Below, one piece after another: positions 43,596 to 56,273 of a DNA stretch of 64,000 nucleotides; position 1 is the stretch's first letter; each line of letters opens with the position of its first letter. Under the pieces are notes generated by a model that worked only from the letters and a program-made list of their open reading frames with translations, was not told the origin of the DNA and did not search any database. The stretch covers positions 248,001 through 312,000 of the IMG/VR virus record IMGVR_UViG_3300027834_000005. The stretch is one strand, 5' to 3'. The translations under genes were made by a program, and so were the position numbers.

Positions 43596-44024
43596 ATGGA
43601 AATTTCTAGGACGTTAGAGGAGCAACTCAGTTATTTAGAGATGGCTCTTTTCAATGGAGTATTCAGTGAAGATAAGCTTGCGGATCATTTGCAATGTGTG
43701 ATGCAAGATAAACTGGCAGGGCATGACCCTATGGCATATGATTCAGCTACGTGTAAACAGTTGAACCTAAATAAATATAGCGACCTGACAGATTACAGTA
43801 CCGTTTATCCAGCTAGGCATAGTATTTTTACTGAGATGGCTAATGAGATAACTATTCTGGTTAAACGTAATGAAGTATTAGAAGCCGAAGTAAAAACGTT
43901 ATGCGAAGACCGTACTAGACATGATAATAGATTACGTAATCTTGAAGATAAAGTGAATGTTTTAGTACAAACGCACAACGCTAAAGCAGAACATGAATCT
44001 GCTATACAGACGAGGATTTATTAA
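43596..44024 (+). CDS. hypothetical coiled-coil protein
   Basis: Coupled ORF. Confidence 0.55.
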   Translation: MEISRTLEEQLSYLEMALFNGVFSEDKLADHLQCVMQDKLAGHDPMAYDSATCKQLNLNKYSDLTDYSTVYPARHSIFTEMANEITILVKRNEVLEAEVKTLCEDRTRHDNRLRNLEDKVNVLVQTHNAKAEHESAIQTRIY

Positions 44025-45238
44025 TGAGTGAATTATGTACTTTTTGTGGTAAAGGAAAAGGCGAGGTTGATTTACTTATATCAGGACCGTTAGACTCTGA
44101 AGGTGTACCATCAGCCTACATTTGTAGTGAATGTACTGGTGTCGCTGAAGAGTTCGTATTAGAAATGAAAGCGGATGAGGCTGCACTTGATAAAGTTGAG
44201 TGTACCAAGTCCATTTTGTATCCTAATGATATTAAGAATCAATTAGATGAGTACGTGGTTGGTCAAAATAGCGCTAAAGAAAAGTTATCAGTGGCGATAT
44301 TCAATCATAAGAAAAGAATTGCCATGGTTAATCGTGGTGAGGACACAGTGGAAAAGTCAAATATTCTAATGGTAGGACCATCAGGTAGTGGTAAGACGTT
44401 ATTATTGAAGACTATTACTAAGATTGCTGACGTTCCGTGCATTGTCGCTAACAGCACCTCTCTCACTGAGGCAGGTTATGTAGGGCAAGACGTAGAAAGT
44501 ATCTTTGAGGACCTTCTTATGGCCGCTGACGGCGATATAGATAAGGCACAGCAAGGTATTGTGTTCTTAGATGAGATTGATAAGAAAGCTAAGGCAAAAA
44601 CAGGCGGTAGTGGTAGGGATATCTCAGGCGAAGGCGTACAGCAAGCTTTATTGAAGCTAGTTGAGGGCACAGAGCTTATGATCAACCCTAATCCGAAGAA
44701 TAAGCAACCATTAACGTTGGTTCCATTCAACACTAAGGACATTTTGTTCATAGCTGGTGGTGCATTCGTTGGGTTGGATGATATAGCTAAGAAAAGAGAT
44801 GCTGGCACGACCATGGGTCTATCTGCAACTCTTACTAATAGTGATGAGGCCACAGTGCCTAAGATATCATCTGAAGATTTGAGTAAGTATGGTCTTATAC
44901 GGGAATTCATTGGTAGATTCCCTATCATGGTAACTCTGCAACCACTAAGCGTGGATATGCTGAAAAGAATTATCGTGGAACCTAAGAATAGCATATTCTC
45001 TCAATTTAAAGACTTGTTTGCGGTTGAAGAAATAGAATTGGTATTCACAGAAGAATACCTAGAGTACTTGGCTTCAAAAGCCATAGAGCACAAGACTGGG
45101 GCCAGAGGCCTTAGAAGAAGTCTTGAAGAAGATCTTAGTGGCGTACAGTTCGATCTTAAAAAACATAAAAATGATAATGTCATACGTGTAGTCGTTGGAG
45201 ACAAAGGTATCATTACATTAGAAAAGGAAGATACATGA
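44024..45238 (+). CDS. clpX: ClpX AAA+ unfoldase
   Basis: C4 Zn-binding domain, GPSGSGKT, GYVG pore-1, LDEIDK, RDISGEGVQQALLK, GARGLR. Confidence 0.95.
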   Translation: MSELCTFCGKGKGEVDLLISGPLDSEGVPSAYICSECTGVAEEFVLEMKADEAALDKVECTKSILYPNDIKNQLDEYVVGQNSAKEKLSVAIFNHKKRIAMVNRGEDTVEKSNILMVGPSGSGKTLLLKTITKIADVPCIVANSTSLTEAGYVGQDVESIFEDLLMAADGDIDKAQQGIVFLDEIDKKAKAKTGGSGRDISGEGVQQALLKLVEGTELMINPNPKNKQPLTLVPFNTKDILFIAGGAFVGLDDIAKKRDAGTTMGLSATLTNSDEATVPKISSEDLSKYGLIREFIGRFPIMVTLQPLSVDMLKRIIVEPKNSIFSQFKDLFAVEEIELVFTEEYLEYLASKAIEHKTGARGLRRSLEEDLSGVQFDLKKHKNDNVIRVVVGDKGIITLEKEDT

Positions 45239-45471
45239 AAGGTCCAGTAAGGATAGAAGGTCTTGCGGTAGAAGTTAAAGGTAACTTCGAACGCGCATTA
45301 AGGATGTTCAGTAAAAAAGTACAAAGCTCAGGACTCATTCGTGAGTTGAGAGAAAGAGAGCACTACGAGAAGAAGACGTCTAAGCGAAAGAAAGATAAGG
45401 CAGCTGCAAGTCGTAGAGAGCAAAAGCGCGTCAGAGATAATAGCCCTGAAGCACAACACAGAAAAAGATAA
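45235..45471 (+). CDS. rpsU: 30S ribosomal protein bS21 homologue
   Basis: V.V..NFERALRMFSKKV..SG...ELRERE.YEK...KRK. Confidence 0.88.
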   Translation: MKGPVRIEGLAVEVKGNFERALRMFSKKVQSSGLIRELREREHYEKKTSKRKKDKAAASRREQKRVRDNSPEAQHRKR

Positions 45472-45515
45472 ATACTATTATCAGTTGTTTTTTTGATCTT
45501 ATTTGTAAATAAAGC

Positions 45516-45532
45516 TTCCCTTAACGGGGAAA
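45516..45532. terminator. hairpin between rpsU and clpS
   Basis: TTCCC-TTAACG-GGGAA; same loop sequence as the terminator at 11537. Confidence 0.4.
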
Positions 45533-45534
45533 GT

Positions 45535-45563
45535 TTGTTACAATAGCGCAAAATTAATATACT
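45535..45563 (+). promoter_or_regulatory. possible sigma70 promoter for clpS
   Basis: TTGTTA-17-TATACT. Confidence 0.45.
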
Positions 45564-45583
45564 GATGGTAGGAGATACCGACA

Positions 45584-45889
45584 ATGAGCACACAAACATG
45601 CGAAGACACTATGGTTTTGGAAGAAGTTCAGATTAAGGAACCTTCCACGTATCAAGTAGTTTTCTTGAACGACGATAAAACCCACATTGAATTTGTGGTG
45701 GATGTATTAGCTTCAGTATTTCACAAAACATTAGTGGATGCGGAAATGGTTACCTTACAGATTCATCATACTGGGCGTGGCATTGCCGGTGTATACAGTG
45801 AGGAAATTGCCGAGACTAAGCAAGAAGAGACTACGAAATTGGCTCGCGCCAATGGATTCCCTCTTCAAGTTGTGGTTGAGGAAGTGTAA
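45584..45889 (+). CDS. clpS: ClpS N-degron adaptor
   Basis: P..Y.V..LNDD.T..EFVV.VL, HH.G, AETK, A...GFPL; AGGAG RBS. Confidence 0.93.
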   Translation: MSTQTCEDTMVLEEVQIKEPSTYQVVFLNDDKTHIEFVVDVLASVFHKTLVDAEMVTLQIHHTGRGIAGVYSEEIAETKQEETTKLARANGFPLQVVVEEV

Positions 45890-46161
45890 TGAATAACTTT
45901 TTCATGATTTCAACATTATGTTTGTGTTTTGGATTGGCCTCCTTACTTATGGGTAGGGAAATAGGCCATAAAGAATCACGAATAGATGCTGATGCTGTGG
46001 TAAGTGTTTCTAAACTGACAATAGTGAAGATGCATTATGCATGTGGCGGAAGCCAATACGTTAATGAATTCAATTTTGACGTCAATACACTTACGGGTGA
46101 TTTCGGAACAGTCACTGTAATATGCAGAGACGGTACGGAAATTTCTTTGATAGACGAATAG
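45889..46161 (+). CDS. small exported or membrane-anchored hypothetical protein
   Basis: Hydrophobic N-terminus; coupled ORF. Confidence 0.55.
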   Translation: MNNFFMISTLCLCFGLASLLMGREIGHKESRIDADAVVSVSKLTIVKMHYACGGSQYVNEFNFDVNTLTGDFGTVTVICRDGTEISLIDE

Positions 46162-46227
46162 TACCGTAAAATATACCGTCATTATACGTGACGTACGATG
46201 GTGGTAATTATGTACAAGGAGTGTACC

Positions 46228-46506
46228 ATGAGAACCAGAGAACATTGGAAAGAATGCTTAAGTGATGAGCCGTATATTATGGCCCAGACAGTAGTTCTAG
46301 AGTTAAAAGACATTGCTAAAAACTCAGGATATGATCCTAGAGGAGTTAAGGTCCATAGTAAAGAAGAAGCTATGAGGCGTAACATCGGACGCGTTGGTGC
46401 ATTCATAACGTGGAATGAAGGTCCCATTGGTTGGACTGATTTCTGTGATTTGCCCTTCGAGTTTTGTGATGTGTATGAAGGTTCCATGCTAATATTTTAT
46501 GATTGA
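46228..46506 (+). CDS. hypothetical protein
   Basis: AGGAG RBS before MRTREH. Confidence 0.6.
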   Translation: MRTREHWKECLSDEPYIMAQTVVLELKDIAKNSGYDPRGVKVHSKEEAMRRNIGRVGAFITWNEGPIGWTDFCDLPFEFCDVYEGSMLIFYD

Positions 46507-46804
46507 TTTAAAAGAGGTCGGCGTTAAATACGTCGCCACAGATAAGAAAGGAAAGAAAATAACCTTCCAGATCATTTATTACGACAGTTTAATTGAGATG
46601 GTAGGTTTGAACGATTGTAACGTATACGATCTTGATGATTACCGAAAGAACGTGTACGATGCAGTGAAGGGATTCGTAGATAGCCCGTATGATATTACGT
46701 GGTATTCAGTGCCAAGCTACGAAAGTAACCTAGTTGATGCCGTAAAGGAGGCAATAACTACAGGCAACCATACCATAGTCATAGAATACACAGATATAGA
46801 TTGA
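46499..46804 (+). CDS. hypothetical protein
   Basis: Overlapping ORF in operon. Confidence 0.55.
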   Translation: MIDLKEVGVKYVATDKKGKKITFQIIYYDSLIEMVGLNDCNVYDLDDYRKNVYDAVKGFVDSPYDITWYSVPSYESNLVDAVKEAITTGNHTIVIEYTDID

Positions 46805-46822
46805 GAAAACATGTTGAAAACA

Positions 46823-46831
46823 TGTTATAAT
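46823..46831 (+). promoter_or_regulatory. extended -10 promoter TGtTATAAT
   Basis: Intergenic, preceded by a short direct repeat GAAAACATGTT. Confidence 0.55.
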
Positions 46832-46862
46832 TGATTCAGATTATCCATTAACAGAGGTATAT

Positions 46863-47096
46863 ATGACGACTCCCCAACATAACACAGGTCCTATCCCACC
46901 AGCCACAGAATGTGAGTGGCCGGTGTCGATAGACGAGCGTGGCATAGTTTTCTGCCATAGCAAGCAAATTAAATCTGGATCAAGTTACTGCGCTGAACAC
47001 CATTCAGAAGCCTATTACTCTCCATCTAACCAAGATGATATCGACTTAGCAGAAGTTGACACAAACACTGTTGAGATCGATCCACTGAGAGAATAG
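46863..47096 (+). CDS. small Cys/His protein (GcrA-C-like CxW..C..YC..H)
   Basis: CEWP...FCH....GSSYCAEH; GAGG RBS. Confidence 0.5.
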   Translation: MTTPQHNTGPIPPATECEWPVSIDERGIVFCHSKQIKSGSSYCAEHHSEAYYSPSNQDDIDLAEVDTNTVEIDPLRE

Positions 47097-47378
47097 ATGA
47101 CGTATCATGTAACTGGGTTGGTGTCGGAGCCGACGTTATTTTTCTCCGATGATGGCGTTTCATTGTTTACAGATCCAAACGAGAAGTGGTTTATTAGTGA
47201 AGTATTAGATCGTTTGGTATCAAAGGACACAAAAAAAGTGTATTCGGTGGAACTATTTGGTAAGAACGCCAATATAAATCCTGGTCTACGGCGCATGGAA
47301 CTATCTGTGCGACTTCAAGAGATTGATGATAGTGGAGCAGATAGTATTGACGATAAGGTTTTGGTGTATAGCAAATGA
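47097..47378 (+). CDS. hypothetical protein
   Basis: Abuts the previous stop codon. Confidence 0.55.
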   Translation: MTYHVTGLVSEPTLFFSDDGVSLFTDPNEKWFISEVLDRLVSKDTKKVYSVELFGKNANINPGLRRMELSVRLQEIDDSGADSIDDKVLVYSK

Positions 47379-47665
47379 TTGATGTGGCCTACGTATTTAT
47401 ATCACAGTTTTTTATGATTTTATTAGTGGGCCTCAATCAATTAAATGTGGTTCACAACCATATTTATATGGCAATGACGACATCACTGCTCATCAGTGTG
47501 TGTAGCTTTTATAACGTCAACGCCATATCACAGACAGAGGCATACTCACCTACATGGTTTGCTTTTATAATTGCCGGTGGTATAGCTATTGGGGCATCTA
47601 TGAAATTGCATCCTATAATGGTTAGAGCATTTAACAAGGCAGATAAAAATGACACAGATACTTGA
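47375..47665 (+). CDS. small membrane protein (about 3 TM)
   Basis: Hydrophobic segments; coupled ORF. Confidence 0.6.
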   Translation: MIDVAYVFISQFFMILLVGLNQLNVVHNHIYMAMTTSLLISVCSFYNVNAISQTEAYSPTWFAFIIAGGIAIGASMKLHPIMVRAFNKADKNDTDT

Positions 47666-48155
47666 GAATTTATCCCTTATCGCGGCGACTACGCAAGATG
47701 GCGGTATAGGGTCAGAAAATAGATTACCATGGAAATGTCCAGAAGACATGAAATTCTTTAAAGAATTCACCACTGGTAAATCAGTTATTATGGGACATAA
47801 CACGTTTGAGTCCATTGGTAGCAGAGCGCTACCTAACAGAGACAACTATGTTGTCACACGTCATGCTAATAGCACGCATGGTAGTTTGAGGTTTATGAAC
47901 TTTGATAGCATCCTTGAATTAGTTAAACTCCACAGCGATAAAGAATTTATCGTGATAGGTGGAGAAAAAACATACGCTGCTTTTATGAAACACATCAGTA
48001 AGGCATATATAACTACGATCAAAGATTCGTGCGTATATAAAGATATGGAAATAGATACGTTCTTGCCATCGTTATCGGAGTCATTCTTTTTGCAAGGTGT
48101 ACTCCGTTCCCATGACACTTGCGTTATTAGAAAATGGAGAACACCGAGAACTTAA
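47649..48155 (+). CDS. folA: dihydrofolate reductase
   Basis: IAA....GIG.EN.LPW..PEDMKFFK..T.G..VIMGHNTFESI..RALPNR.N.V, IGG, D.FLP. Confidence 0.93.
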   Translation: MTQILENLSLIAATTQDGGIGSENRLPWKCPEDMKFFKEFTTGKSVIMGHNTFESIGSRALPNRDNYVVTRHANSTHGSLRFMNFDSILELVKLHSDKEFIVIGGEKTYAAFMKHISKAYITTIKDSCVYKDMEIDTFLPSLSESFFLQGVLRSHDTCVIRKWRTPRT

Positions 48156-48157
48156 CA

Positions 48158-48400
48158 ATGAATACTTACACTCACATATATAACATCGTTGGTAAGCCTA
48201 CATGTACAGTAACTGTACATGAAGATTGCGCAGGCATGCATACATTTGCATCTAGCTCTCTAAAAAAATCGTCAAATAACCTAGCTAGTCCGAATATATT
48301 GGAGTTGTTAGTGTGGGTTAGCGAAAGAAAGAATGCTGAGTTGGAACTAAAGGAGTCAACGCGTAATGAAGGTGAGATTGAAGGAAAGTTCAAAGTTTGA
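48158..48400 (+). CDS. hypothetical protein
   Basis: ORF filling the gap after folA. Confidence 0.5.
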   Translation: MNTYTHIYNIVGKPTCTVTVHEDCAGMHTFASSSLKKSSNNLASPNILELLVWVSERKNAELELKESTRNEGEIEGKFKV

Positions 48401-49022
48401 TGATCTCCAAAGTATAAAAAGACGTTACTATGGTTACTTGGACGACACTAATATAAGGGCGCTGGCTTTTATGTTAACTGTCCCTATTGCCATTAGTCAT
48501 TTCATTAGATATTGCTTGCATAAATTTAAGTTTAGTGATAAAATAGTCATAGAGTCAAACGACGTGAAGAATGCCGATATAACAATGGCTAAAATTATAG
48601 TGCCATTATTGGAAAGGTTAAATGTTGAGAAGCAAGGTGTGCCTCCAGTTGATGACATGGACGTACCGGATGCTATTATGGATATAGGCGTTAAGTTCCA
48701 TGGTATAGACGTGTCTCGTAGCTTTAAGTGGGAATATGTCATGACTAGGATGATTATATCATTCAAGTACGTGTCTAATGAGTTAGCCGTAACATCCTGC
48801 GAGGAAGGTCTAGGAGACATTAGAATACCTGATGTTCTTAAGATACACACTGAGTTGATTCATGAAGAGATGGACACATTAAAGTCTCTTGAAGAAACAC
48901 ACGGCAAGATTAAGATGGAAGACTACTATGAGTTCATGGAAGTGGACCCGAACAATATTGAAAGGGTAGTCCAAGAAGGTCTTGATTTATTCTCCAAATA
49001 TTACTTGAGGTTATGGACATAA
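48366..49022 (+). CDS. hypothetical protein
   Basis: 218-aa ORF; ends GLDLFSKYY.RLW as in T4-like hypotheticals. Confidence 0.6.
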   Translation: MKVRLKESSKFDDLQSIKRRYYGYLDDTNIRALAFMLTVPIAISHFIRYCLHKFKFSDKIVIESNDVKNADITMAKIIVPLLERLNVEKQGVPPVDDMDVPDAIMDIGVKFHGIDVSRSFKWEYVMTRMIISFKYVSNELAVTSCEEGLGDIRIPDVLKIHTELIHEEMDTLKSLEETHGKIKMEDYYEFMEVDPNNIERVVQEGLDLFSKYYLRLWT

Positions 49023-49285
49023 TGTACATTAACGATGAAGACAAAAAAGATACAGCAAACAGCACACTAGGTATATACTACATGGGCGTATTACTTATTT
49101 TATTGCTCGCAGTATGTGGGTATCAGCGCTATATGTTAGATGATATGGGATATGGCAATAAGGAATACTCTGAGGTTAGAGAACTATGCGTGGAAGCGCA
49201 CAAGGAAGGTATCGGATGTAAAGTTGGCTTTGGCCCTTACGCCGAGTTTGAGCAAATGGAGTACACCAAGGAAGATGAGCGATAA
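49013..49285 (+). CDS. small membrane-anchored protein
   Basis: Single TM segment. Confidence 0.5.
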   Translation: MDIMYINDEDKKDTANSTLGIYYMGVLLILLLAVCGYQRYMLDDMGYGNKEYSEVRELCVEAHKEGIGCKVGFGPYAEFEQMEYTKEDER

Positions 49286-50099
49286 TATACACTTTTTACA
49301 GATCATGGAGCCTAATGTAGAAGGGAAAGACTTCGTTGTTGGGGACATCCATGGTCATTTCAGAAAACTTGATAATAAGTTGGAAGAAATAGGTTTTAAT
49401 TTCGAACAAGATAGGCTATTCGTAGTGGGTGACTTGATCGATAGAGGTCCGTACTCTCATGAGTGCTTAGATTATCTTAAAAAAGACTGGTTCTATTCCA
49501 TAAAAGGAAACCATGAAGAGTTTCTAGTTAGAGGAGTAGACTTTATGTTACGCGGCTGCCCTGCTGATGATATGACTGGTATCATATCATATAATACATG
49601 GATGGGTAACGGCGGAAGATGGTTCGAAGACTTAAAAACCGTGCACGGTGAAGACCTTGGAGTTAAAGAGCTTAAAGAATACATGGTCGCATTAGACGCA
49701 TTACCGTATTTCATGGAAATTCCGGTACAAGTCGATGGCACTATGAAGAAAGTTGCAATGGTACATGCTGAAATCAACGATACCTATGACTGGAACGACG
49801 TAGTGTCGGTGTCGAATGGTTTAGAAGTCGAATGTACTGATGCTAGTAGACTCATGCGAGACGCTGCTTGGAGCAGATCACGCATAGAGAGATGTGGAAC
49901 CTCAGTTATGTATGGTAAGGATCACTCTTGTGAAACTATGCTTAATATAGACGCTGTGTTCTGCGGACACACACCCATCATTGAGTATACAGATACTGCG
50001 CCGTTTACTATAGGTAATATTCACTATATAGACACGTGGGTATATGGGCAGATAGATAATAATTTTCAGATAATTGATCTGAAGGATTTTTTATCTTGA
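49275..50099 (+). CDS. Ser/Thr protein phosphatase-like metallophosphoesterase (PphA/NinI-like)
   Basis: VGDIHG, VGDLIDRGP, GNHE, NGG.W, VHA, GHTP, IDT; start moved to MSDNIH. Confidence 0.9.
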   Translation: MSDNIHFLQIMEPNVEGKDFVVGDIHGHFRKLDNKLEEIGFNFEQDRLFVVGDLIDRGPYSHECLDYLKKDWFYSIKGNHEEFLVRGVDFMLRGCPADDMTGIISYNTWMGNGGRWFEDLKTVHGEDLGVKELKEYMVALDALPYFMEIPVQVDGTMKKVAMVHAEINDTYDWNDVVSVSNGLEVECTDASRLMRDAAWSRSRIERCGTSVMYGKDHSCETMLNIDAVFCGHTPIIEYTDTAPFTIGNIHYIDTWVYGQIDNNFQIIDLKDFLS

Positions 50100-50124
50100 C
50101 TTGACTCATGAATGATGGTAAAAT
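50096..50124 (+). promoter_or_regulatory. sigma70-type promoter
   Basis: TTGACT-17-TAAAAT with extended TG. Confidence 0.7.
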
Positions 50125-50130
50125 ACACAC

Positions 50131-50178
50131 ATGATAAGGCAATTGGTGAGCCAGTTAATCAACACCACATTAGACTGA
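50131..50178 (+). CDS. possible leaderless 15-aa peptide MIRQLVSQLINTTLD
   Basis: ATG 6 nt after the -10 box; enclosed by promoter and terminator. Confidence 0.3.
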   Translation: MIRQLVSQLINTTLD

Positions 50179-50195
50179 TAATAAAATACCTTTTT

Positions 50196-50217
50196 GGGCA
50201 CTACGGTGCCCTTTTTT
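50196..50217 (+). terminator. intrinsic terminator
   Basis: GGGCAC-TACG-GTGCCC followed by TTTTTT. Confidence 0.85.
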
Positions 50218-50225
50218 ATGGACAT

Positions 50226-50570
50226 ATGAAGACAATAATAGCCGGTAGTAGAGACAACGTAGGACCAGAACATTTATTTGAGGCATTTGACATAATAGAT
50301 TATGAAATTACTCAAGTGATATGCGGATGCGCCAGAGGTGCAGACACAATAGGTAAGGCATGGGCCGACCTAGAAGGCATACCATGCTTAGAAATGCCTG
50401 CGGACTGGGATCTACACGGAAAGAAAGCTGGATCTATTCGTAATGAAGAGATGGCGTTAGAAGCAGAAGCTCTCATCGCGTTGTGGGACGGAGTAAGCAC
50501 CGGCACGGCTAACATGATAAACATAGCAGAACGTCTTGGGCTTCATGTCACTGTGATATACACACAATAA
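50226..50570 (+). CDS. SLOG superfamily protein (YspA/DUF2493-like)
   Basis: TIIAGSRD, ICGCARGAD.IG..WA, W..HGKKAG.IRN..M, LIALWDG.S.GT.NMI; start moved from 50112. Confidence 0.85.
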   Translation: MKTIIAGSRDNVGPEHLFEAFDIIDYEITQVICGCARGADTIGKAWADLEGIPCLEMPADWDLHGKKAGSIRNEEMALEAEALIALWDGVSTGTANMINIAERLGLHVTVIYTQ

Positions 50571-50573
50571 TAT

Positions 50574-50602
50574 TTGACAACAACTTTAAAATAGAATAGT
50601 AT
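50574..50602 (+). promoter_or_regulatory. sigma70-type promoter
   Basis: TTGACA-17-TAGTAT. Confidence 0.6.
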
Positions 50603-50625
50603 TATGCTTCTTAACGGAGAATACT

Positions 50626-51861
50626 ATGTTAGCTTTTTTATTAATACTTATCCCATTCGCAGCATTCTTGATTGCGAAATTATGTTTTAACCACAAATTT
50701 AACTTCCAAGAGGTCGTGATCGGTATCATCATATGTGCTGCTTCTGCGATAGCCGTTCTTGAAGTATCTAAAAATGGCAAAATGGCTGACAGAGAGATCT
50801 GGAACGGCAAAGTTACCTCCAAACAACCAGAGAAACGCAATTGTCCCGTACCAGACTACGATGGCTGGACAGATGAGTACTCATCCTTCTGTAGTGCCCA
50901 TGATGATGAAGAGCGTATTGTTGGGTATGAGACAGTATGTGACTCTTATAATGATAGCGGCAGCTGCACAAGCTCACATGAAGAGCCAATCTATGAAACG
51001 TACTACCGTTATTACTTTAGATACGAACAGCGTTGGTATGTAAACTCCAATCTGGTTAGCTGGGAAGAACCACGCGTAGGCGGACGTTATAAGCAAGGTC
51101 TAAAAGAGCCTAAGAGCTGGACTATTGTCAAGATTAACGACCCTGTGAGTGTCACTAGGCCATATGACAACTACGTCAGAGCCGTACCAGAGAGCTTATT
51201 CAATAATAAGGAAGTAAAGAACGCACATAGCGCTAGTGTTCCGGCATACCCAACAGTTCACGGCAGATATAAAGTGAATCGTGTACTATCGGTGGGATAT
51301 AAAGGTAATATCGACAAAAATAAGCTAAATTATGAGCTTGGTAAGGCATTAGGGCGATTAAACCCTGCAAAACAGGTAAATGTCATCGTTATCCTAACTA
51401 GTATAGGTGATATGTCATTCCGACATGCCGTAGAGAACAAATGGCTTGGTGGTAAGAAAAACGACGCTATTATCTTCATTAGTTTAGACACTAACGGTGA
51501 TATATTGTGGACAGACCTAATGACATTCGGAAAAAATAAGTTTAATGGTATATATACTGCTAATTTAACTGGCGCAATCAGTGATATGGAAAATATTACT
51601 AAAGATAATCAAGGTGAGCTGGTAGGCACTATAGAGAACTTAACTGCCAAGCATTATGATCGACCTGCAATGAAAGAATACTTTTATTTAGTGAAGCATA
51701 TACAACCTTCTACCGGAGCGCTTATATTTGCATTCATATTAGACATTCTTATTTGCGTAGGGTTGTTATGGGCATTCAATAAGTACGACTTTGATCCGAT
51801 AGGCAACTCATACAGACACATTAAGTGGAAATTTAATAGACGTAGAAGATTTAGAAGATAA
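50626..51861 (+). CDS. membrane protein with Cys-rich extracytoplasmic region and TPM-like domain
   Basis: 2 N-terminal and 1 C-terminal TM; VNVIVIL...W.GGKKND.IIFIS TPM-like pattern. Confidence 0.6.
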   Translation: MLAFLLILIPFAAFLIAKLCFNHKFNFQEVVIGIIICAASAIAVLEVSKNGKMADREIWNGKVTSKQPEKRNCPVPDYDGWTDEYSSFCSAHDDEERIVGYETVCDSYNDSGSCTSSHEEPIYETYYRYYFRYEQRWYVNSNLVSWEEPRVGGRYKQGLKEPKSWTIVKINDPVSVTRPYDNYVRAVPESLFNNKEVKNAHSASVPAYPTVHGRYKVNRVLSVGYKGNIDKNKLNYELGKALGRLNPAKQVNVIVILTSIGDMSFRHAVENKWLGGKKNDAIIFISLDTNGDILWTDLMTFGKNKFNGIYTANLTGAISDMENITKDNQGELVGTIENLTAKHYDRPAMKEYFYLVKHIQPSTGALIFAFILDILICVGLLWAFNKYDFDPIGNSYRHIKWKFNRRRRFRR

Positions 51862-51874
51862 ACGGAGAAGGGAA

Positions 51875-52042
51875 ATGGAAATTATTTTAGCGATAATCGT
51901 ATTAAACGGAGCATTCTCAAAAACTATTGAGTATGATATGTCTAGTCTCGCCGAGTGTGAGAGTCACAAGGAAGAGTTAGTGGAGCGATTACGCAAAGAT
52001 AACTTCGTACTTTCTGCAAAATGCAAAATAGAAGGAAAATAG
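51875..52042 (+). CDS. 55-aa small protein (not in ORF track)
   Basis: GGAGAAGGG RBS; MEIILAIIVLNG...C...C; fills the gap exactly. Confidence 0.6.
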   Translation: MEIILAIIVLNGAFSKTIEYDMSSLAECESHKEELVERLRKDNFVLSAKCKIEGK

Positions 52043-52043
52043 G

Positions 52044-52436
52044 ATGTCAAAAATATTAAGACTAAGTGAATGGATTAAAGGCCGTAAGAATAAAACCGAA
52101 ACTACACCTGCAAAGTATGCGAAAGGTGAAGAGAAGCCGGAGCCGGTGCAGGAACCGGAGTATTATTCAGCTATACATATACAACTGAAGAATAATAGAA
52201 CTCTAAACTTGGAGTTAAAAGTTGCGAAACCTGATGGTAAGTTTGGTGTTAGAGAGGCATGGTTGGATTTCATCAAATGGTATCACTGTAGAGAGTCATC
52301 TGAGGTATACACTTTTAAATATAGAGACGATACGTGTTGGACGTATCGATGCATAAAGAAATCAAACATTGAAGAGTACACCATTACTTCTAAAGAAATC
52401 AAACATTCGAAGAGTGCATCATTATTTCCAAAGTAA
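52044..52436 (+). CDS. hypothetical protein
   Basis: ORF with RBS in operon. Confidence 0.55.
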   Translation: MSKILRLSEWIKGRKNKTETTPAKYAKGEEKPEPVQEPEYYSAIHIQLKNNRTLNLELKVAKPDGKFGVREAWLDFIKWYHCRESSEVYTFKYRDDTCWTYRCIKKSNIEEYTITSKEIKHSKSASLFPK

Positions 52437-52464
52437 AGAAAAGATGGGCTTTTAGATAAAAGTG

Positions 52465-52493
52465 TTGACGGTAAGTGTAAAAGATTATATAGT
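52465..52493 (+). promoter_or_regulatory. sigma70-type promoter
   Basis: TTGACG-17-TATAGT. Confidence 0.65.
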
Positions 52494-52528
52494 GAACTCA
52501 TCAAATACATATCCCAACGGAGAAACAC

Positions 52529-53107
52529 ATGAAGCAATCAACAAAAACAACGCTAGCTATCGTAGTAACAGTATTGGTCTTAGTATTAGGTCCTATCATT
52601 GCATTTGGCGTAGCGTATATCGGGCATAAAGATACTGCAGTGGCAACTGAAGAAGGTATTGTAGGTCAATACAAGGCGGACGAGAACACATTGGCCCAGA
52701 TGTCATTGAAAGTAGTGGAAATGATGCAGGTAGCTAACTCACATACCGATGATATGGTGAAGTTAATTTCCGCAGCTATGAAAGGTAAGTATGGTGATGA
52801 CGGAGCAACGGCTAAGATGTTATGGTCGAATGAATCTACGCAGACTATTGATCCTTCTCTGAAGAAAGAAGTAATGCGTGCCATTAAAGGCGGACGTACT
52901 AACTTCGAGCAGATGCAGAATAACAGAATTGACATGTGTCGAGCGTATAAGACGACATTAAGACAGACAGTTAGTGGTTTCTTCTTATCACTGGCTAAGT
53001 TCCCCGAAATTGACTTGGCAACGTACTGTGAAATTGTAAGTTCATCTCATGCTCGTGAAGCTTTCGAGACGAAGATTGACAAAGGTTTAGATCTTAAGAA
53101 CCTATAG
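52529..53107 (+). CDS. membrane-anchored helical protein, LemA-like
   Basis: N-terminal TM followed by a helical bundle; ends FF...A.FP as in LemA-type proteins. Confidence 0.5.
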   Translation: MKQSTKTTLAIVVTVLVLVLGPIIAFGVAYIGHKDTAVATEEGIVGQYKADENTLAQMSLKVVEMMQVANSHTDDMVKLISAAMKGKYGDDGATAKMLWSNESTQTIDPSLKKEVMRAIKGGRTNFEQMQNNRIDMCRAYKTTLRQTVSGFFLSLAKFPEIDLATYCEIVSSSHAREAFETKIDKGLDLKNL

Positions 53108-53123
53108 CACTTACTTTATGAAC

Positions 53124-53147
53124 AAAAACCGCCTAGTGCGGTTTTTT
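53124..53147. terminator. bidirectional-type terminator
   Basis: AAAAACCGC-ctagt-GCGGTTTTT. Confidence 0.8.
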
Positions 53148-53163
53148 ACGTGGAGAACAAAGA

Positions 53164-53658
53164 ATGAGATCTATAATCGTACTGTCCACATGGTGGGGCG
53201 GTAAAAAAATAGAAATGAAATGTAAATCGGTAGATATGGTTGGTATTGATGCGGATTACGTAGCCGCAGGATTACAGATTGATGTTGAAAATGATGGAAA
53301 AATGAGACATGGGAAAACTTTCGTACTGAAGGTGAGAAATATCGAAGAGGTAGATGGTGAGAACATAGACGACTTCGAGAATACATTACGAGGCCTGAAA
53401 AAATACGCCATGGTCTTGCATTCATTCAGGTCATATGAGAAAGAAGATTTCATTTGTAAGGAAGTGTATGCCAAAGACGATAGAGATGCTGAAAATCAGA
53501 CGTCGTATTGGTTAATAAATGAGGAATACGATAGCGGATGCTGGGTTGAAATAGAAACCAATGAAACTATAACCAAAAAACCGGAACGTATTCACCAGAC
53601 ATCTAAAAGTTATGTTCCTTGTTGGTGGTGCAAGCTTAAATCCTTTATATTTGGATAA
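53164..53658 (+). CDS. hypothetical protein
   Basis: GGAG RBS. Confidence 0.55.
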   Translation: MRSIIVLSTWWGGKKIEMKCKSVDMVGIDADYVAAGLQIDVENDGKMRHGKTFVLKVRNIEEVDGENIDDFENTLRGLKKYAMVLHSFRSYEKEDFICKEVYAKDDRDAENQTSYWLINEEYDSGCWVEIETNETITKKPERIHQTSKSYVPCWWCKLKSFIFG

Positions 53659-53661
53659 GTC

Positions 53662-53690
53662 TTTACAAAAAAGTCGTGGTGTGGTAAAAT
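53662..53690 (+). promoter_or_regulatory. sigma70-type promoter
   Basis: TTTACA-17-TAAAAT with extended TG. Confidence 0.6.
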
Positions 53691-53724
53691 ACGCACCATA
53701 AAACATACCTAGAGCTTATTTATT

Positions 53725-53889
53725 ATGGAAGAAGACGTTATTGCAGAGTTAGAACGACATAAAAAGTTCATAGCTGGAATGTATGAAATATTATCTGCCG
53801 AAGGATACTTCGGTATAGCTACTCAGTGCGAAGAGCTTACTGAGAGCACAGAAAACTTAATTGAAAGACTAAAAAATGATAAACTTTGA
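53725..53889 (+). CDS. 54-aa small protein (not in ORF track)
   Basis: MEEDVIAELERHKK...; lies between the promoter and the next gene. Confidence 0.5.
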   Translation: MEEDVIAELERHKKFIAGMYEILSAEGYFGIATQCEELTESTENLIERLKNDKL

Positions 53890-54622
53890 TAATGTAACAA
53901 TAGTTAATACCGAAACAACTGGACTTGACTTCAAACAAGACCAAGTCATAGCATTATGCGTAGGATATAAGTCATCCACTGGTAAGTGGGATAATATGAC
54001 ATCTTATTGTAAAGCTGATGTTCCTATTACGCCAGAAATTTCATACCTACATGACATTACTGAAAGTATGTTAGGCGATAAGAGACTTCATGAGTTAGAT
54101 GGCGTTATACCTGACGTGAATGAATACGTTGTAATGTGTAATTCAACTTTTCATGCAGGCATGATTAACGGTAATGGCAGTAAAATGTTATCCGGTAAAA
54201 AATTGATATGCGTTAGTAGAATAAGTAAGAAGCTTGATGCGTTAGGTTTGGGCATGACTAATTATAAATTGCCATACTTGAATCATTTCTTCGGGGCGAA
54301 CATAAAAAGAAATGATTATGAAACCGACACTGCTATGCATAACGCCATCATAGGTAAAGTGTTCGAGAAGCAAGTAGAAATGATGAAGGCTTTAGGGCAG
54401 ATTCATGAATATAATCTTGAAGAGATCTATGAGTGGTTAGAAGCGCCTATTATATATGAAAATATGACGTTTGGTAAACATGTCGGTAAGCCTATGGTAG
54501 AAATACCTATTACTTACTGGACGTGGGCCTTAAGCAACATGGATTCATTGCAGGAAGATGGCGATAAGTACGATTCTGACTTAGCTGCCTCTGTGGCTGC
54601 CGCTTTAGATAAGATTCTATAG
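53876..54622 (+). CDS. DEDDh exonuclease X-like protein with DUF3820-like C-terminus, probably catalytically degenerate
   Basis: NTETTG in place of DTETTG; H.IT..ML; C-terminal MTFGKH.G....EIP..Y..W. Confidence 0.7.
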   Translation: MINFDNVTIVNTETTGLDFKQDQVIALCVGYKSSTGKWDNMTSYCKADVPITPEISYLHDITESMLGDKRLHELDGVIPDVNEYVVMCNSTFHAGMINGNGSKMLSGKKLICVSRISKKLDALGLGMTNYKLPYLNHFFGANIKRNDYETDTAMHNAIIGKVFEKQVEMMKALGQIHEYNLEEIYEWLEAPIIYENMTFGKHVGKPMVEIPITYWTWALSNMDSLQEDGDKYDSDLAASVAAALDKIL

Positions 54623-54961
54623 CGGAGTAGGAACATCTGGGGTATCTTGGACGAAATAGTCAGGGTCGAATCGTTGGTATTTGTCATGTGGCATACCAGC
54701 ATTAGCTTTAGCCTCTTCTCTTCCTCGATATCCAGCAGATTGCATATCACCTACGACTGGAGTAGAGGTCCAATCCTCTTCTTCGTTATCAACATCATCC
54801 GTGACTACGGGCGTGCCCCCTTTATTATCTTTGGCTTTCTTTTTAGCCTTAGATTCCTCTTCTTCTTTATAAGAAGATGATTCAGGGTTCAACTCAGCAT
54901 CCAATTCATTGGTGGCTGAAAAGTATTTGTCGTTTGTCTCGAAAAGTTCTATAAGTCTCAT
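54617..54961 (-). CDS. acidic putative internal head protein (solitary minus-strand late gene)
   Basis: MRLIELFE start 5 nt after GATAAATA (start moved from 55168). Confidence 0.65.
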   Translation of the reverse strand: MRLIELFETNDKYFSATNELDAELNPESSSYKEEEESKAKKKAKDNKGGTPVVTDDVDNEEEDWTSTPVVGDMQSAGYRGREEAKANAGMPHDKYQRFDPDYFVQDTPDVPTPL

Positions 54962-54966
54962 GCTAT

Positions 54967-54974
54967 TATTTATC
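54967..54974 (-). promoter_or_regulatory. late promoter motif GATAAATA (minus strand)
   Basis: TATTTATC. Confidence 0.7.
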
Positions 54975-54981
54975 AAAAACA

Positions 54982-55010
54982 TTGACCTTATGTGGTCTTT
55001 GTAGTATAAT
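54982..55010 (+). promoter_or_regulatory. sigma70-type promoter
   Basis: TTGACC-17-TATAAT. Confidence 0.75.
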
Positions 55011-55033
55011 ACACGCATTAAAGGAGAGCCACA

Positions 55034-55240
55034 ATGAAGAAAGATTATAAAATCAGTGACATCAGCCAAATAACCCGATATAATGGGTTCACTGAGATGC
55101 TCTTGCAAGAAGATTACAAGAAATTCAAAGAAGGTCAGTACTCTAGTGCCGTGTATGTTGCAGAACAAAAGCAGTTCTATGTGTATGGCGAGTTAACCTT
55201 CGAAAAAGTTAACGTAGATGAGAATCCATTCAATGATTAA
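55034..55240 (+). CDS. hypothetical protein
   Basis: AAAGGAG RBS. Confidence 0.65.
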   Translation: MKKDYKISDISQITRYNGFTEMLLQEDYKKFKEGQYSSAVYVAEQKQFYVYGELTFEKVNVDENPFND

Positions 55241-55520
55241 CGTAAACGGCATTGTAACCAACACAGACGCTATCGCTATAGACCCTTTGGAAGTATTTGT
55301 GCTCCTAACTATTAAAGCTTTAGTAGTAATCGACACTGAAAAGTTCGATGGTGCAGATAGTGTCGGTCTGGATATGAAAACAGACGAAGTTGTAGTTATT
55401 AAAGGTACAGGCGTTACACGTTATGGGCCTGATGATTTTGAATGTGAGTCTTATGATCGCATTGCCAACTTGTTAATCGGTAAACTTGAATTTTTAGAAG
55501 TAGCAAAAAATATTAGATGA
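55233..55520 (+). CDS. hypothetical protein
   Basis: Overlapping ORF; start moved to MINVNG. Confidence 0.55.
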   Translation: MINVNGIVTNTDAIAIDPLEVFVLLTIKALVVIDTEKFDGADSVGLDMKTDEVVVIKGTGVTRYGPDDFECESYDRIANLLIGKLEFLEVAKNIR

Positions 55521-55525
55521 TTATG

Positions 55526-55554
55526 TTGACACCAATATAAAAATCGAATAGAAT
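55526..55554 (+). promoter_or_regulatory. sigma70-type promoter for clpP
   Basis: TTGACA-17-TAGAAT. Confidence 0.75.
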
Positions 55555-55591
55555 TACAACTCAATACTTTCACTGACAAAAGAGAAAAAAC

Positions 55592-56236
55592 ATGAATACT
55601 CCATTATCTAGCTTAGTACCTATGGTCGTTGAACAAACCCCTAACGGCGAACGCTCTTACGATATCTTCTCACGTTTACTTAAAGAACGTATCATCTACG
55701 TAAGTGGTGAAGTCCATGACGGTATGGCTGATATTGTTACTGCGCAAATGATGTTCCTTGAAGCGGAAAATCCTGAAAGCGATATCAATATGTACATCAA
55801 TTCTCCTGGTGGTTCTGTTACTGCTGGCTTAGCCATCTATAACACCGCTCAATTTATCGAATGTGACGTGAAAACTATCGTTACTGGTCAAGCAGCATCA
55901 ATGGGTAGCTTCTTAGCTCAATCAGGTACTGCCGGTAAGCGTTTTGTAATGGGCGAATCACGTACTATGATCCATCGTGTTAGTGCCGGTACAGCCAACA
56001 CACAAGGTTCTATCCACGTTATGCGTGAAGAGTTGGAAGATATCAAACGTTCGGTTGAAGAAGGTGAGCGTTTGAACGAACGTTTGACTCAACTGTATGT
56101 TCAGCATAACTCTGTGGGTAAAACTTACGAAGAATTGTTCGAAACCATGCGTTACGACACGTTCTTATCAGCAGAAGATGCTGTTAAAGGCGGATTCGCT
56201 GACCGTGTAATCAGATCACGTGCCGACTTAACCTAA
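55592..56236 (+). CDS. clpP: ATP-dependent Clp protease proteolytic subunit
   Basis: [38 protein letters not shown] (Ser), MIH (His), DTFLSA (Asp). Confidence 0.96.
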
Positions 56237-56248
56237 GTCTGTGCATAG

Positions 56249-56273
56249 GGGTGGCACAGGAGTGCTGCCCTTT
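56249..56273 (+). terminator. probable terminator after clpP
   Basis: GGGTGGCAC-agga-GTGCTGCCC followed by TTT. Confidence 0.65.

What the first reader, a model, noticed from the sequence alone, without database searches (positions are those of the whole stretch)
44024..56236. Phage ClpX with rewritten RKH and IGF loops plus its own ClpP: candidate orthogonal protease
Walker, GYVG pore-1 and RDISGEG pore-2 motifs are intact. The RKH substrate loop (E. coli GGRKHP) aligns with PKNKQP, and the ClpP-docking IGF loop (SGIGFG) aligns with TTMGLS. A catalytically intact clpP lies about 10 kb away under its own strong sigma70 promoter. In E. coli the RKH loop contributes to ssrA-tag recognition and IGF mediates ClpP binding. 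Inference: the pair has new substrate specificity, perhaps for host defence proteins or regulators, and may prefer its cognate partner.
Basis: partly seen in the sequence, partly recalled or inferred. Interest (0 to 1): 0.66.

Follow-up and report, generated by a model that had tools for sequence, protein, structure and literature searches.

The report
Jumbo-phage Clp protease system (ClpX, ClpS, ClpP)
A 347-kb marine jumbo phage carries its own working-looking ClpX unfoldase and ClpP protease as part of a complete phage Clp system; one substrate-recognition loop of ClpX is replaced, but the ClpP-docking loop is only a mild variant, so a protease insulated from the host's is unproven.

Summary
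The sequence observation is correct. ClpX (44024-45238) and ClpP (55592-56236) are intact. PKNKQP aligns with E. coli GGRKHP, and MGL aligns with IGF.

- MGL is not a rewrite. It fits the hydrophobic-Gly-hydrophobic docking motif. The closest relatives carry IGF, MGF, IGV or VGF. The same phage's ClpA carries IGF for the same single ClpP.
- The RKH replacement is real and constrained. The loop N-P-[DN]-P-x-[NC]-[KR]-x-P is shared by the 53-72% identical clade and is better conserved than the protein average. RKH is also missing from several other phage ClpX lineages, including PA5oct.
The gene order matches Pseudomonas phage PA5oct and marine relatives.
- ClpP is not the head protease. A separate T4 gp21-like prohead protease exists.

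Most likely this is a phage-run ClpXP/ClpAPS proteolysis and translation quality-control module with altered degron gating in ClpX. Insulation from the host Clp system is untested. It is a new member of a known kind, of moderate interest.

The parts
43596..44024 (+). 142-aa ORF of unknown function. Its stop overlaps the clpX start. Its C-terminal half looks helical by eye, possibly coiled-coil.
   Evidence: No Pfam or PHROG family. An N-terminal 44-aa stretch is shared with the ORF at the same position in relative L085. The atlas search gave nothing usable.
44024..45238 (+). clpX, 404 aa: a AAA+ unfoldase with an N-terminal C4 zinc-binding domain.
   Evidence: NCBIfam NF003745, 429 bits, above the cut-off of 359. 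E = 1e-94 to solved E. coli ClpX. Catalytic and pore motifs are intact.
44684..44710 (+). Codons for NPNPKNKQP (residues 221-229), the loop that takes the place of the E. coli RKH loop (GGRKHP).
   Evidence: Alignments. The pattern N-P-[DN]-P-x-[NC]-[KR]-x-P is shared by the 10 closest homologues. Conservation is 0.84 against a protein mean of 0.71. Only synonymous changes are seen in a near relative.
44813..44821 (+). Codons for MGL (residues 264-266), the ClpP-docking tripeptide at the IGF position.
   Evidence: Alignments. It is the only MGL among the 122 nearest homologues compared, the window's own ClpX, but it is hydrophobic-Gly-hydrophobic like all the others. The Gly is invariant in the clade. 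No difference at these codons among those listed (40 of 81) for the near relative, whose contigs cover them.
45235..45471 (+). Ribosomal protein S21 gene. Its start overlaps the clpX stop (ATGA).
   Evidence: PF01165, 57.6 bits. TIGR00030, 54.8 bits, above the cut-off of 29. S21 directly follows ClpX in PA5oct (overlapping) and in L085 and L087 (overlapping or abutting).
45584..45889 (+). clpS, a 101-aa adaptor of the N-degron type.
   Evidence: PF02617, 95.7 bits. N34, D35, T38 and H66 of E. coli ClpS are invariant in the alignment. ClpS lies within 10 kb of ClpX in 66 of 80 viral ClpX loci.
55526..55554 (+). Sigma-70-like promoter candidate, TTGACA-17-TAGAAT, 38 nt upstream of the clpP ATG.
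   Evidence: Strong sites are enriched on the coding strand. TTGACT-17-TACAAT lies upstream of clpP in relative L087.
55592..56236 (+). clpP, 214 aa: the serine protease subunit, and the only ClpP in the genome.
   Evidence: PF00574, 195 bits. It is 57% identical to PA5oct ClpP and 48% to E. coli ClpP. The triad, axial loop and most cleft residues are kept, and a 10-aa handle insertion is shared with PA5oct. Single copy.
56247..56272 (+). Terminator-like hairpin after clpP (11-bp stem, 6 G-C pairs).

Best explanation
The window holds three of the four proteins of a complete phage-encoded Clp proteolytic system in a roughly 347-kb marine jumbo phage.

Shown:
- clpX overlaps an S21 gene, and clpS follows 113 bp after S21.
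- The single clpP lies 10.3 kb downstream behind a sigma-70-like site.
- clpA lies about 25 kb beyond the window's end.
- A two-piece tmRNA lies 18 kb before the window's start.

Inferred mechanism:
- ClpX forms a hexamer that docks on the phage ClpP ring through its MGL tripeptide. This is a conservative variant of IGF.
- ClpA (tripeptide IGF) together with ClpS uses the same ClpP.
- The system keeps regulated proteolysis and clearance of stalled-translation products running on phage terms during a long infection, alongside the phage's 37 tRNAs, S21 and tmRNA.
- The E. coli-type RKH loop at the pore entrance is replaced by a proline-rich loop. This loop keeps the central Lys but loses the Arg and His. 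That probably shifts which degrons ClpX accepts, compared with canonical bacterial ClpX.

Nothing in the sequence requires the pair to be insulated from host ClpX or ClpP.
For: Family membership and intact motifs:
- ClpX, ClpP, ClpS and ClpA all match their families with intact motifs.

Conserved gene order:
- The order ThyA, ClpX-S21, ClpS, exonuclease, a reverse ORF, ClpP, MazG matches PA5oct.
- The same order, apart from MazG, is seen in marine relatives L085 and L087.

Co-occurrence in other phages:
- A strong ClpP match is present in 13 of 18 other ClpX-bearing phage records, including all 4 complete ones.
- ClpS is near ClpX in 66 of 80 viral loci.
- A permuted tmRNA is present in 11 of those 18 records. 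In 10 of the 11 it lies 7-14 kb from ClpX.
- The window's own genome has a tmRNA (RF01850, 85.5 bits; RF04321, 81.6 bits).

Selection and docking:
- A near relative from another study shows purifying selection: 38 synonymous against 2 non-synonymous differences.
- The RKH-equivalent loop is conserved within the clade.
- The docking tripeptide conforms to the motif seen across homologues and to the IGL/IGF of ClpA.
Against: - There is no biochemical or expression data. No RNA run holds the locus.
- The complex prediction gave no answer.
- The IGF region is the least conserved part of ClpX in this clade (0.55), and MGL is a private variant, so ClpX-ClpP docking strength is unknown.
- ClpP falls just below the NCBIfam cut-offs (231.6 against 249).
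- No SmpB is encoded, so the tmRNA would depend on the host protein.
- The tag ends in QAA, unlike the [LMI]AA of the other ten phage tags read, and no link to the ClpX loop could be tested.
- The host is unknown.
Confidence: 0.65

Rival explanations
1. One reading: an orthogonal protease. Phage ClpX docks only on phage ClpP because its IGF loop is rewritten. Its new RKH loop redirects it to host defence proteins or regulators.
For: - The RKH loop is replaced and is conserved within the clade.
- ClpP cleft positions 60, 90, 92, 112, 114 and 189 and the docking tripeptide both differ between the window (MGL), PA5oct (MGF) and L087 (IGV). This is what co-evolving partners would show.
- Tyr60 of E. 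coli ClpP is Asn in 35 of 38 phage ClpPs.
Against: - MGL is within the natural hydrophobic-Gly-hydrophobic range, and the closest relatives keep IGF.
- The same ClpP must also accept the IGF of phage ClpA.
- L23, F49, A52, Y62, F82, I90 and F112 of the cleft are unchanged.
- 78 of 80 viral ClpX loci keep IGF exactly.
- There is no evidence on substrates.
Confidence: 0.15
2. ClpX works mainly without ClpP, as a stand-alone unfoldase or remodeller (for replication complexes, assembly or ribosome-linked tasks). ClpP is chiefly the partner of phage ClpA-ClpS.
For: - The IGF region is the least conserved part of ClpX in the clade (0.55 against 0.71), and MGL is unique.
- clpX is coupled to S21, not to clpP, which sits 10 kb away with its own promoter-like site.
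- Published comparative work proposes chaperone or translocase roles for phage ClpX (PMC7824862).
Against: - The Gly and both flanking hydrophobic residues are retained in every clade member.
- A true ClpP-independent ClpX would be expected to lose the motif.
- ClpP co-occurs with ClpX in all complete phage records examined.
Confidence: 0.12
3. The ClpP homologue is the capsid (head) maturation protease, as automated annotation labels it, and is unrelated to ClpX.
For: - Best PHROG hit is phrog_94, 'head maturation protease', at 149 bits.
- RefSeq labels the PA5oct orthologue the same way.
- The PA5oct ClpP record carries an ESI-MS/MS note.
Against: - A separate T4 gp21-type prohead protease (PF03420, 98 bits) lies at genome 160273-160734.
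- The protein scores 231.6 bits on cellular ClpP models, against 88.5 bits on the Clp-related head-maturation model, which is below that model's cut-off of 120.
- It keeps the ClpX/ClpA-facing axial loop and docking cleft.
- It lies among nucleotide-metabolism genes, not structural genes.
- Enzymes such as thymidylate synthase and ligase carry the same ESI-MS/MS note in PA5oct.
Confidence: 0.03
4. These are recently captured host genes, or bacterial contamination of the viral contig, with no phage-specific role.
For: ClpX and ClpP are cellular families. Several short 'phage' records in the collection with ClpX hits are unannotated fragments.
Against: - The genes sit in the middle of a 347-kb record called viral, estimated 94% complete.
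- The gene order matches cultured phage PA5oct.
- The best bacterial-type homologues are only about 47% identical, while a phage-type clade reaches 53-72%.
- The composition is uniform at about 40% GC.
Confidence: 0.02

Closest known systems
ClpX/ClpS/ClpP genes of Pseudomonas jumbo phage PA5oct (Arenbergviridae, Wroclawvirus; MK797984)
   Same: - Same gene order: ThyA, ClpX overlapping S21, ClpS, a DNA pol III epsilon-like exonuclease, a reverse ORF, ClpP, MazG.
- ClpP is 57% identical and ClpX 42%.
- ClpX lacks RKH and has a Met-Gly-hydrophobic docking tripeptide (MGF).
- ClpP shares the handle insertion.
   Different: - PA5oct has FtsH, an FtsH-interacting protein and a small heat-shock protein between ClpS and ClpP. 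The window has none there, and the genome shows only a weak AAA-domain match elsewhere.
- The PA5oct RKH-position loop (LNSNSMFSP) is unrelated to the window's loop.
- No tmRNA was found in PA5oct.
- The host here is unknown and marine.
E. coli ClpXP (solved structures 8e91, 6wrf and others)
   Same: - Domain order, zinc finger, Walker A and B, GYVG, pore-2, Arg finger and sensor-II in ClpX.
- Triad, axial loop and most docking-cleft residues in ClpP.
- The roles of the RKH loops in ssrA-tag binding and of the IGF loops in ClpP docking are taken from PMC10638403.
   Different: - RKH becomes N-K-Q preceded by a Lys, in a proline-rich loop one residue shorter.
- IGF becomes MGL.
- There is a 7-residue insertion in the zinc-binding domain.
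- ClpP changes: Y60N, M92T, L114M, L48M, and a 10-residue handle insertion.
Clp gene sets of other giant phages (Agrobacterium phage Atu_ph07, Sinorhizobium phage Phosso, Bacillus phage G, Lak phages)
   Same: - For Atu_ph07 and phage G, phage-encoded ClpX plus ClpP is described in the literature, in Atu_ph07 with ClpA and ClpS, and in phage G with a tmRNA (PMC6102473; PMC12484599; PMC7824862).
- For Phosso (ClpX and ClpP) and the Lak phages (ClpX) there are only sequence matches here.
- None has been studied functionally, as far as the library searches show.
   Different: - Atu_ph07 ClpX has GGRKNP and FGF.
- Its genes are scattered, with no ClpX-S21 coupling.
- Identity to the window's ClpX is 44%.
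Marine viral contigs with a ClpP-ClpX-ClpS cluster and a 'VPNKPQHNPEKV' loop (IMG/VR, e.g. L036, L083)
   Same: - A non-RKH, proline- and lysine-containing loop at the same position.
- ClpS follows ClpX, the phages carry their own ClpP (49-66% identical to the window's), and a two-piece tmRNA lies nearby.
   Different: - A separate ClpX clade in the tree, 38-41% identical.
- ClpP lies 4-6.6 kb upstream of ClpX rather than 10 kb downstream.
- The docking tripeptide is strictly IGF.
- The tags end in MAA or IAA.

Membership tests
ClpX (AAA+ unfoldase) | Full-length match to curated ClpX equivalog models, above their cut-offs. | tested here: met
   NF003745, 429.2 bits against a cut-off of 359. 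TIGR00382, 392.8 bits against 370.75.
ClpX (AAA+ unfoldase) | N-terminal C4 zinc-binding domain. | tested here: met
   PF06689, 32.2 bits against a cut-off of 27. CxxC...CxxC is present, with a 7-residue insertion shared by the clade.
ClpX (AAA+ unfoldase) | Walker A and B, pore-1 GYVG, pore-2 loop, Arg finger and sensor-II. | tested here: met
   GPSGSGKT, DEID, GYVG, RDISGEG, GRFP and GARGLR are all present.
ClpX (AAA+ unfoldase) | RKH loop (GGRKHP), typical of bacterial ClpX. | tested here: not met
   It is replaced by NPNPKNKQP. RKH is present in 88 of the 122 nearest homologues and absent from several phage-type clades. From my own knowledge, RKH is also absent from human mitochondrial CLPX, so it is typical of bacterial ClpX rather than defining for the family.
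ClpX (AAA+ unfoldase) | ClpP-docking tripeptide, hydrophobic-Gly-hydrophobic (IGF in E. coli). | tested here: met
   MGL sits at the aligned position. Homologues show IGF, VGF, MGF, IGI, LGF, IGV and LGI. E. coli ClpA has IGL. The exact IGF is not present.
ClpX (AAA+ unfoldase) | Physical docking on ClpP and ATP-dependent substrate delivery. | tested here: inconclusive
   The complex prediction scored 0.19, below the mark of 0.34, and gave no verdict. This needs biochemistry.
ClpP (self-compartmentalised serine protease) | Pfam CLP_protease domain and the Ser-His-Asp triad. | tested here: met
   PF00574, 194.9 bits. S97, H122 and D171 are aligned and kept.
ClpP (self-compartmentalised serine protease) | Score above the curated NCBIfam ClpP cut-offs. 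| tested here: not met
   NF001368, 231.6 bits against 249. TIGR00493, 213.9 bits against 308.6. It is a divergent phage-type ClpP, but still far closer to cellular ClpP than to any other model.
ClpP (self-compartmentalised serine protease) | N-terminal axial loop and hydrophobic cleft for the partner ATPase. | tested here: met
   The axial loop is nearly identical to E. coli's. L23, F49, A52, Y62, F82, I90 and F112 are kept. Y60N, M92T, L114M, L48M and L189I are changed. The list of cleft residues comes from my own knowledge of ADEP/IGF-bound ClpP structures.
ClpP-related phage head maturation protease | Match to the Clp-related head-maturation model, and a location in the structural module as the only prohead protease. 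| tested here: not met
   NF045542, 88.5 bits against a cut-off of 120. A separate PF03420 prohead protease is encoded elsewhere. The neighbouring genes are metabolic.
ClpS adaptor | ClpS domain with the N-degron pocket residues. | tested here: met
   PF02617, 95.7 bits. N34, D35, T38 and H66 are invariant in the alignment with E. coli ClpS. It falls below the NCBIfam equivalog cut-offs (91.4 against 112).
Two-piece (permuted) tmRNA (outside the window) | Rfam covariance-model score above the gathering threshold, and a tag reading frame. | tested here: met
   RF01850, 85.5 bits against 84. RF04321, 81.6 bits against 47. ARAGORN reports a permuted tmRNA with the tag ANEELYAQAA.

The most novel reading that the evidence does not exclude
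The phage runs a self-contained tag-and-destroy circuit.
- Its own tmRNA adds a tag ending in QAA to stalled products. The ten other phage tags read here end in [LMI]AA.
- Its ClpX, whose RKH loop is remodelled, is tuned to that tag, or tuned to ignore the host's tags.
- It feeds a co-evolving phage ClpP.

Phage-directed proteolysis would then be insulated from the host Clp network. Natural phage ClpX loops would become a ready-made set of orthogonal degron/unfoldase pairs.
Probability: 0.1. Interest if true: 0.72.

Novelty: new member of a known kind. Interest (0 to 1): 0.4.

Why it matters
Phage-encoded ClpX, ClpP, ClpS and ClpA are listed in several jumbo-phage genomes, but none has been characterised.

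This case and its relatives show three things:
- Phage ClpX nearly always travels with a phage ClpP and ClpS, and often with a two-piece tmRNA and S21.
- The docking motif is kept.
- The substrate-gating RKH loop has been replaced repeatedly, by lineage-specific but conserved loops.

That makes these proteins natural experiments on how the ClpX pore entrance sets degron specificity. They are also candidates for engineered degradation systems. The result points to protein turnover and ribosome rescue as processes that large phages take into their own hands. The stronger claim, a protease insulated from the host's, is not supported by sequence and needs biochemistry.

Tried and rejected
- Complex prediction. 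ClpP x2 plus ClpX residues 62-404 scored 0.16 and 0.19, below the mark of 0.34. This gave no verdict and is not evidence either way.
- Near-identical DNA in cultured phages: none found.
- Tag/loop covariation. Tags from 10 other ClpX-bearing phages end in [LMI]AA whether their ClpX has RKH or not. There is no simple rule, and the window's QAA remains a single case.
- A scan of viral contigs for the coding pattern of LYAQAA-stop gave 14 matches. None lies in a tmRNA.
- Reaching relatives' tmRNAs through the neighbouring C1 peptidase gene: four homologous contigs fetched, and none has room for a tmRNA next to the gene.
- Searching the records behind L085 and L087 for tmRNA: these records are not held.
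- The idea that loss of RKH goes with having one's own ClpP. Within 10 kb of ClpX it looks so (38 of 56 against 0 of 24). Whole-record searches show that RKH-type phages also carry a ClpP elsewhere, so this was rejected.
- ClpP as the head protease: rejected.
- Function of the 142-aa ORF upstream of clpX: Pfam, PHROGs and the atlas gave nothing usable.
- Expression: no RNA run holds the locus.
- The large representative-protein search and structure prediction were not run. The family assignments were already unambiguous.

Full report
**Where the window lies**

The window is bases 248001-312000 of a 347,232-bp IMG/VR virus record. The record is linear and estimated 94% complete. GC content is about 40% and even, and coding is almost all on the + strand. 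The DNA comes from a marine metagenome. Close relatives occur in marine sediment metagenomes from other studies.

**Check of the observation**

ClpX:
- The ORF at 44024-45238 gives a 404-aa protein.
- It passes both curated ClpX equivalog models: 429 bits against a cut-off of 359, and 393 bits against 371.
- It matches solved E. coli ClpX at E = 1e-94.
- The zinc finger, Walker A and B, GYVG, RDISGEG, Arg finger and sensor-II are all present.
- The HMMER alignment puts 'npnpknkqpl' opposite 'pqggrkhpq' and 'agttmglsat' opposite 'gsgigfgat'.

ClpP:
- The ORF at 55592-56236 gives a 214-aa ClpP (PF00574, 195 bits).
- The Ser/His/Asp triad is intact and the axial loop is almost the same as in E. 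coli.
- It begins 10.35 kb after clpX ends.

Promoter and terminator:
- TTGACA-17-TAGAAT lies 38 nt before the clpP ATG, and a strong hairpin follows the gene.
- Sites with 11 or more of 12 matches number 8 on the coding strand and 2 on the other strand, against 1.7 +/- 1.2 per strand expected.
- A host-type promoter is therefore credible, though it is only a consensus match.

**What surrounds the two genes**

The sequence shows a system.
- The clpX stop overlaps the start of a ribosomal protein S21 gene (45235-45471).
- clpS follows at 45584-45889. It scores 95.7 bits on PF02617, and the E. coli residues N34, D35, T38 and H66 are invariant in the alignment.
- A 142-aa ORF of unknown function overlaps the clpX start.
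- Further neighbours are thymidylate synthase, DHFR, a metallophosphatase, a SLOG-domain protein, an RNase T-type exonuclease and MazG.

In the rest of the genome I found:
- a 740-aa ClpA (genome 337398-339620; best match the ClpA model at 825 bits, below its cut-off of 993; 42% identical to E. coli ClpA);
- only one ClpP;
- a separate T4 gp21-type prohead protease;
- 37 tRNA genes and a permuted two-piece tmRNA at genome 229770-230138 with the tag ANEELYAQAA;
- no SmpB.

**Relatives**

No cultured phage is close at the DNA level. By protein, the nearest cultured group is Pseudomonas phage PA5oct: ClpX 42% identical, ClpP 57%.

PA5oct has the same gene order: ThyA, ClpX overlapping S21, ClpS, exonuclease, a reverse ORF, ClpP, MazG. 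It has FtsH and a small heat-shock protein added in between.

The metagenome protein search found ten closer ClpX proteins at 53-72% identity, then a drop to about 47%. Two of their contigs show the same layout. One of them includes ClpP, 4 kb downstream of ClpX.

**The RKH loop**

Within the window's clade:
- All ten close relatives share N-P-[DN]-P-x-[NC]-[KR]-x-P at this position.
- Column conservation is 0.84 in the loop against 0.71 for the whole protein.
- A relative about 96-97% identical at the DNA level, from another study, has only synonymous changes in the loop. Of its 40 listed differences in ClpX, 38 are synonymous.
- The replacement is therefore fixed and constrained. It is not decay.
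- By alignment, the central Lys of RKH is kept, Arg becomes Asn, His becomes Gln, and a Lys precedes.

Across other ClpX proteins:
- Of the 122 nearest homologues, 88 have RKH, including all those carrying bacterial names.
- Of 80 IMG/VR viral loci with ClpX, only 24 have RKH.
- A tree built with both loops masked shows at least four separate non-RKH groups:
  - the window's clade, near PA5oct;
  - a short acidic-loop group;
  - a large 'VPNKPQHNPEKV' group;
  - scattered others.

In E. coli the RKH loops help hold the ssrA degron (PMC10638403). From my own knowledge of the Sauer and Baker laboratories' work, single changes in RKH shift specificity between ssrA-type and other degron classes. 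A changed degron preference is therefore a fair inference here. It is not shown.

**The IGF loop**

The claim that this loop is rewritten does not hold.
- The position reads IGF 59, VGF 23, MGF 14, IGI 11, LGF 5, IGV 4, LGI 3, and single cases of MGL, VGV, MGI and FGV among the nearest homologues.
- The clade relatives carry IGF (4), MGF, IGV (3), VGV and VGF. PA5oct has MGF.
- E. coli ClpA docks on the same ClpP with IGL. This phage's ClpA has IGF at the aligned site.
- The single phage ClpP therefore has to accept both IGF and MGL.
- On the ClpP side, L23, F49, A52, Y62, F82, I90 and F112 are unchanged. Y60N is the rule in phage ClpPs, at 35 of 38.

- The docking region is the least conserved part of ClpX in the clade (0.55).
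- Cleft positions 60, 90, 92, 112, 114 and 189 differ among the window, PA5oct and L087.
- That pattern is compatible with partners drifting together. With only three pairs it cannot be tested.

**Wider pattern**

- Of the 80 viral ClpX loci, 66 have ClpS within 10 kb, usually 0.3-4.7 kb downstream of ClpX.
- ClpP lies within 10 kb in 38 of 56 non-RKH loci and in none of the 24 RKH loci.
- Whole-record searches, however, find a strong ClpP match in 13 of 18 records, including all four complete ones. The RKH-type phages G007, G008, G009 and G015 are among them. Having one's own ClpP is therefore general and is not tied to loss of RKH.
- A permuted tmRNA above the Rfam cut-off is present in 11 of the same 18 records. 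By my arithmetic from the reported coordinates, it lies on the ClpX strand 7-14 kb away in 10 of them.
- Ten tags could be read. They end in LAA, MAA or IAA, in both RKH and non-RKH phages.
- The window's QAA ending is the exception. I could not find a second example.
- Many of these phages are related to one another, so these counts are not independent events.

**Mechanism**

Shown:
- the genes, their motifs and their order;
- their conservation and co-occurrence;
- purifying selection.

Inferred:
- ClpX hexamers dock on phage ClpP through MGL.
- ClpA with ClpS uses the same ClpP for substrates of the N-degron type.
- Together with the tmRNA, S21 and the tRNAs, the phage keeps proteolysis and clearance of stalled translation running under its own control.
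- The new loop at the pore entrance changes which degrons ClpX accepts.

Not inferable from the sequence:
- the substrates;
- any action on host defence proteins;
- insulation from the host's ClpX or ClpP.

The one complex prediction returned no verdict.

**Comparison with the literature**

- Iyer and colleagues list ClpP, ClpS, ClpA and ClpX in subsets of jumbo phages. They suggest host-directed proteolysis or chaperone roles (PMC7824862).
- The Atu_ph07 paper lists seven Clp-family genes (PMC6102473).
- The phage G paper reports adjacent ClpP and ClpX, both detected by mass spectrometry, plus a tmRNA. It suggests that ClpXP monitors translation (PMC12484599).
- Library searches found no functional study of a phage ClpX and no analysis of its RKH or IGF loops.

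**Verdict**

- This is a new member of a known kind.
- The useful additions are three: the complete Clp system with its tmRNA and S21 context; the finding that replacement of RKH is recurrent and constrained in phage ClpX; and the finding that the docking motif is conserved.

Noticed in passing
Outside the window: G000:C1:229770-230138 (L084:1271-1639), 18 kb before the window's start: A permuted two-piece tmRNA gene with the tag ANEELYAQAA (RF01850, 85.5 bits; RF04321, 81.6 bits). The tag ends in QAA, whereas ten other phage tmRNA tags read here end in LAA, MAA or IAA. No SmpB is encoded in the genome.
   Followed up: partly
Outside the window: G000:C1:337398-339620 (L116:499-2721): A 740-aa ClpA homologue, 42% identical to E. 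coli ClpA. Its ClpP-docking tripeptide is IGF where E. coli ClpA has IGL. With ClpS, ClpX and ClpP, the phage therefore has a full Clp set.
   Followed up: yes
Loci L101-L111 in records G001, G003 and G006-G015: In 10 of 11 other ClpX-bearing phage records that have a permuted tmRNA, the tmRNA lies on the same strand 7-14 kb from clpX. This suggests a conserved island for translation and proteolysis. The phages are partly related to each other, so the cases are not independent.
   Followed up: partly
window 45235-45238; L002:5956-5969; L085:11191-11194; L087:11191: In the window, PA5oct and L085 the clpX stop overlaps the start of a ribosomal protein S21 gene. In L087 the two genes overlap or abut (clpX ends and S21 starts at 11191).
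   Followed up: partly
window 43596-44024: A 142-aa ORF with no family match, whose C-terminal half looks helical by eye. Its stop overlaps the clpX start. An ORF of the same size at the same place in relative L085 shares a 44-residue N-terminal motif. It could be a ClpX accessory protein, but nothing supports that yet.
   Followed up: partly
L084:2036-2914 (genome about 230535-231413): A papain-like C1 peptidase (PF00112) lies next to the tmRNA. The identical protein is recorded on a contig of 410,284 bp, so the phage genome may be larger than the 347-kb record.
   Followed up: no
window, whole + strand (e.g. 40982-41010, 43500-43528, 54982-55010, 55056-55084, 60553-60581): Eight near-perfect sigma-70-like sites, all with 17-nt spacers, lie on the coding strand, against two on the other strand and about 1.7 expected. 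This hints that much of the region is read by host RNA polymerase.
   Followed up: partly
Outside the window: G000:C1:160273-160734: A T4 gp21-type prohead protease (PF03420, 98 bits). The labels 'head maturation protease' on ClpP orthologues in RefSeq and PHROGs are therefore probably mis-annotations for this phage group.
   Followed up: yes
Outside the window: G000:C1:100979-211544: 37 tRNA genes, most of them in a cluster at 193-211 kb, including a tRNA-Ile with anticodon TAT.
   Followed up: no
window 46863-47096: A 77-aa ORF with a borderline match to the C-terminal part of the GcrA cell-cycle regulator (PF07750, 26.3 bits against a cut-off of 26.9). The same ORF is called in relative L085. 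GcrA is an alphaproteobacterial family, which may be a clue to the host.
   Followed up: no
window 55592-56236 (ClpP handle region, after His122): A 10-residue insertion in the ClpP handle helix. It is shared with PA5oct and some marine phage ClpPs and is absent from E. coli ClpP and from other phage ClpPs (e.g. L026).
   Followed up: no
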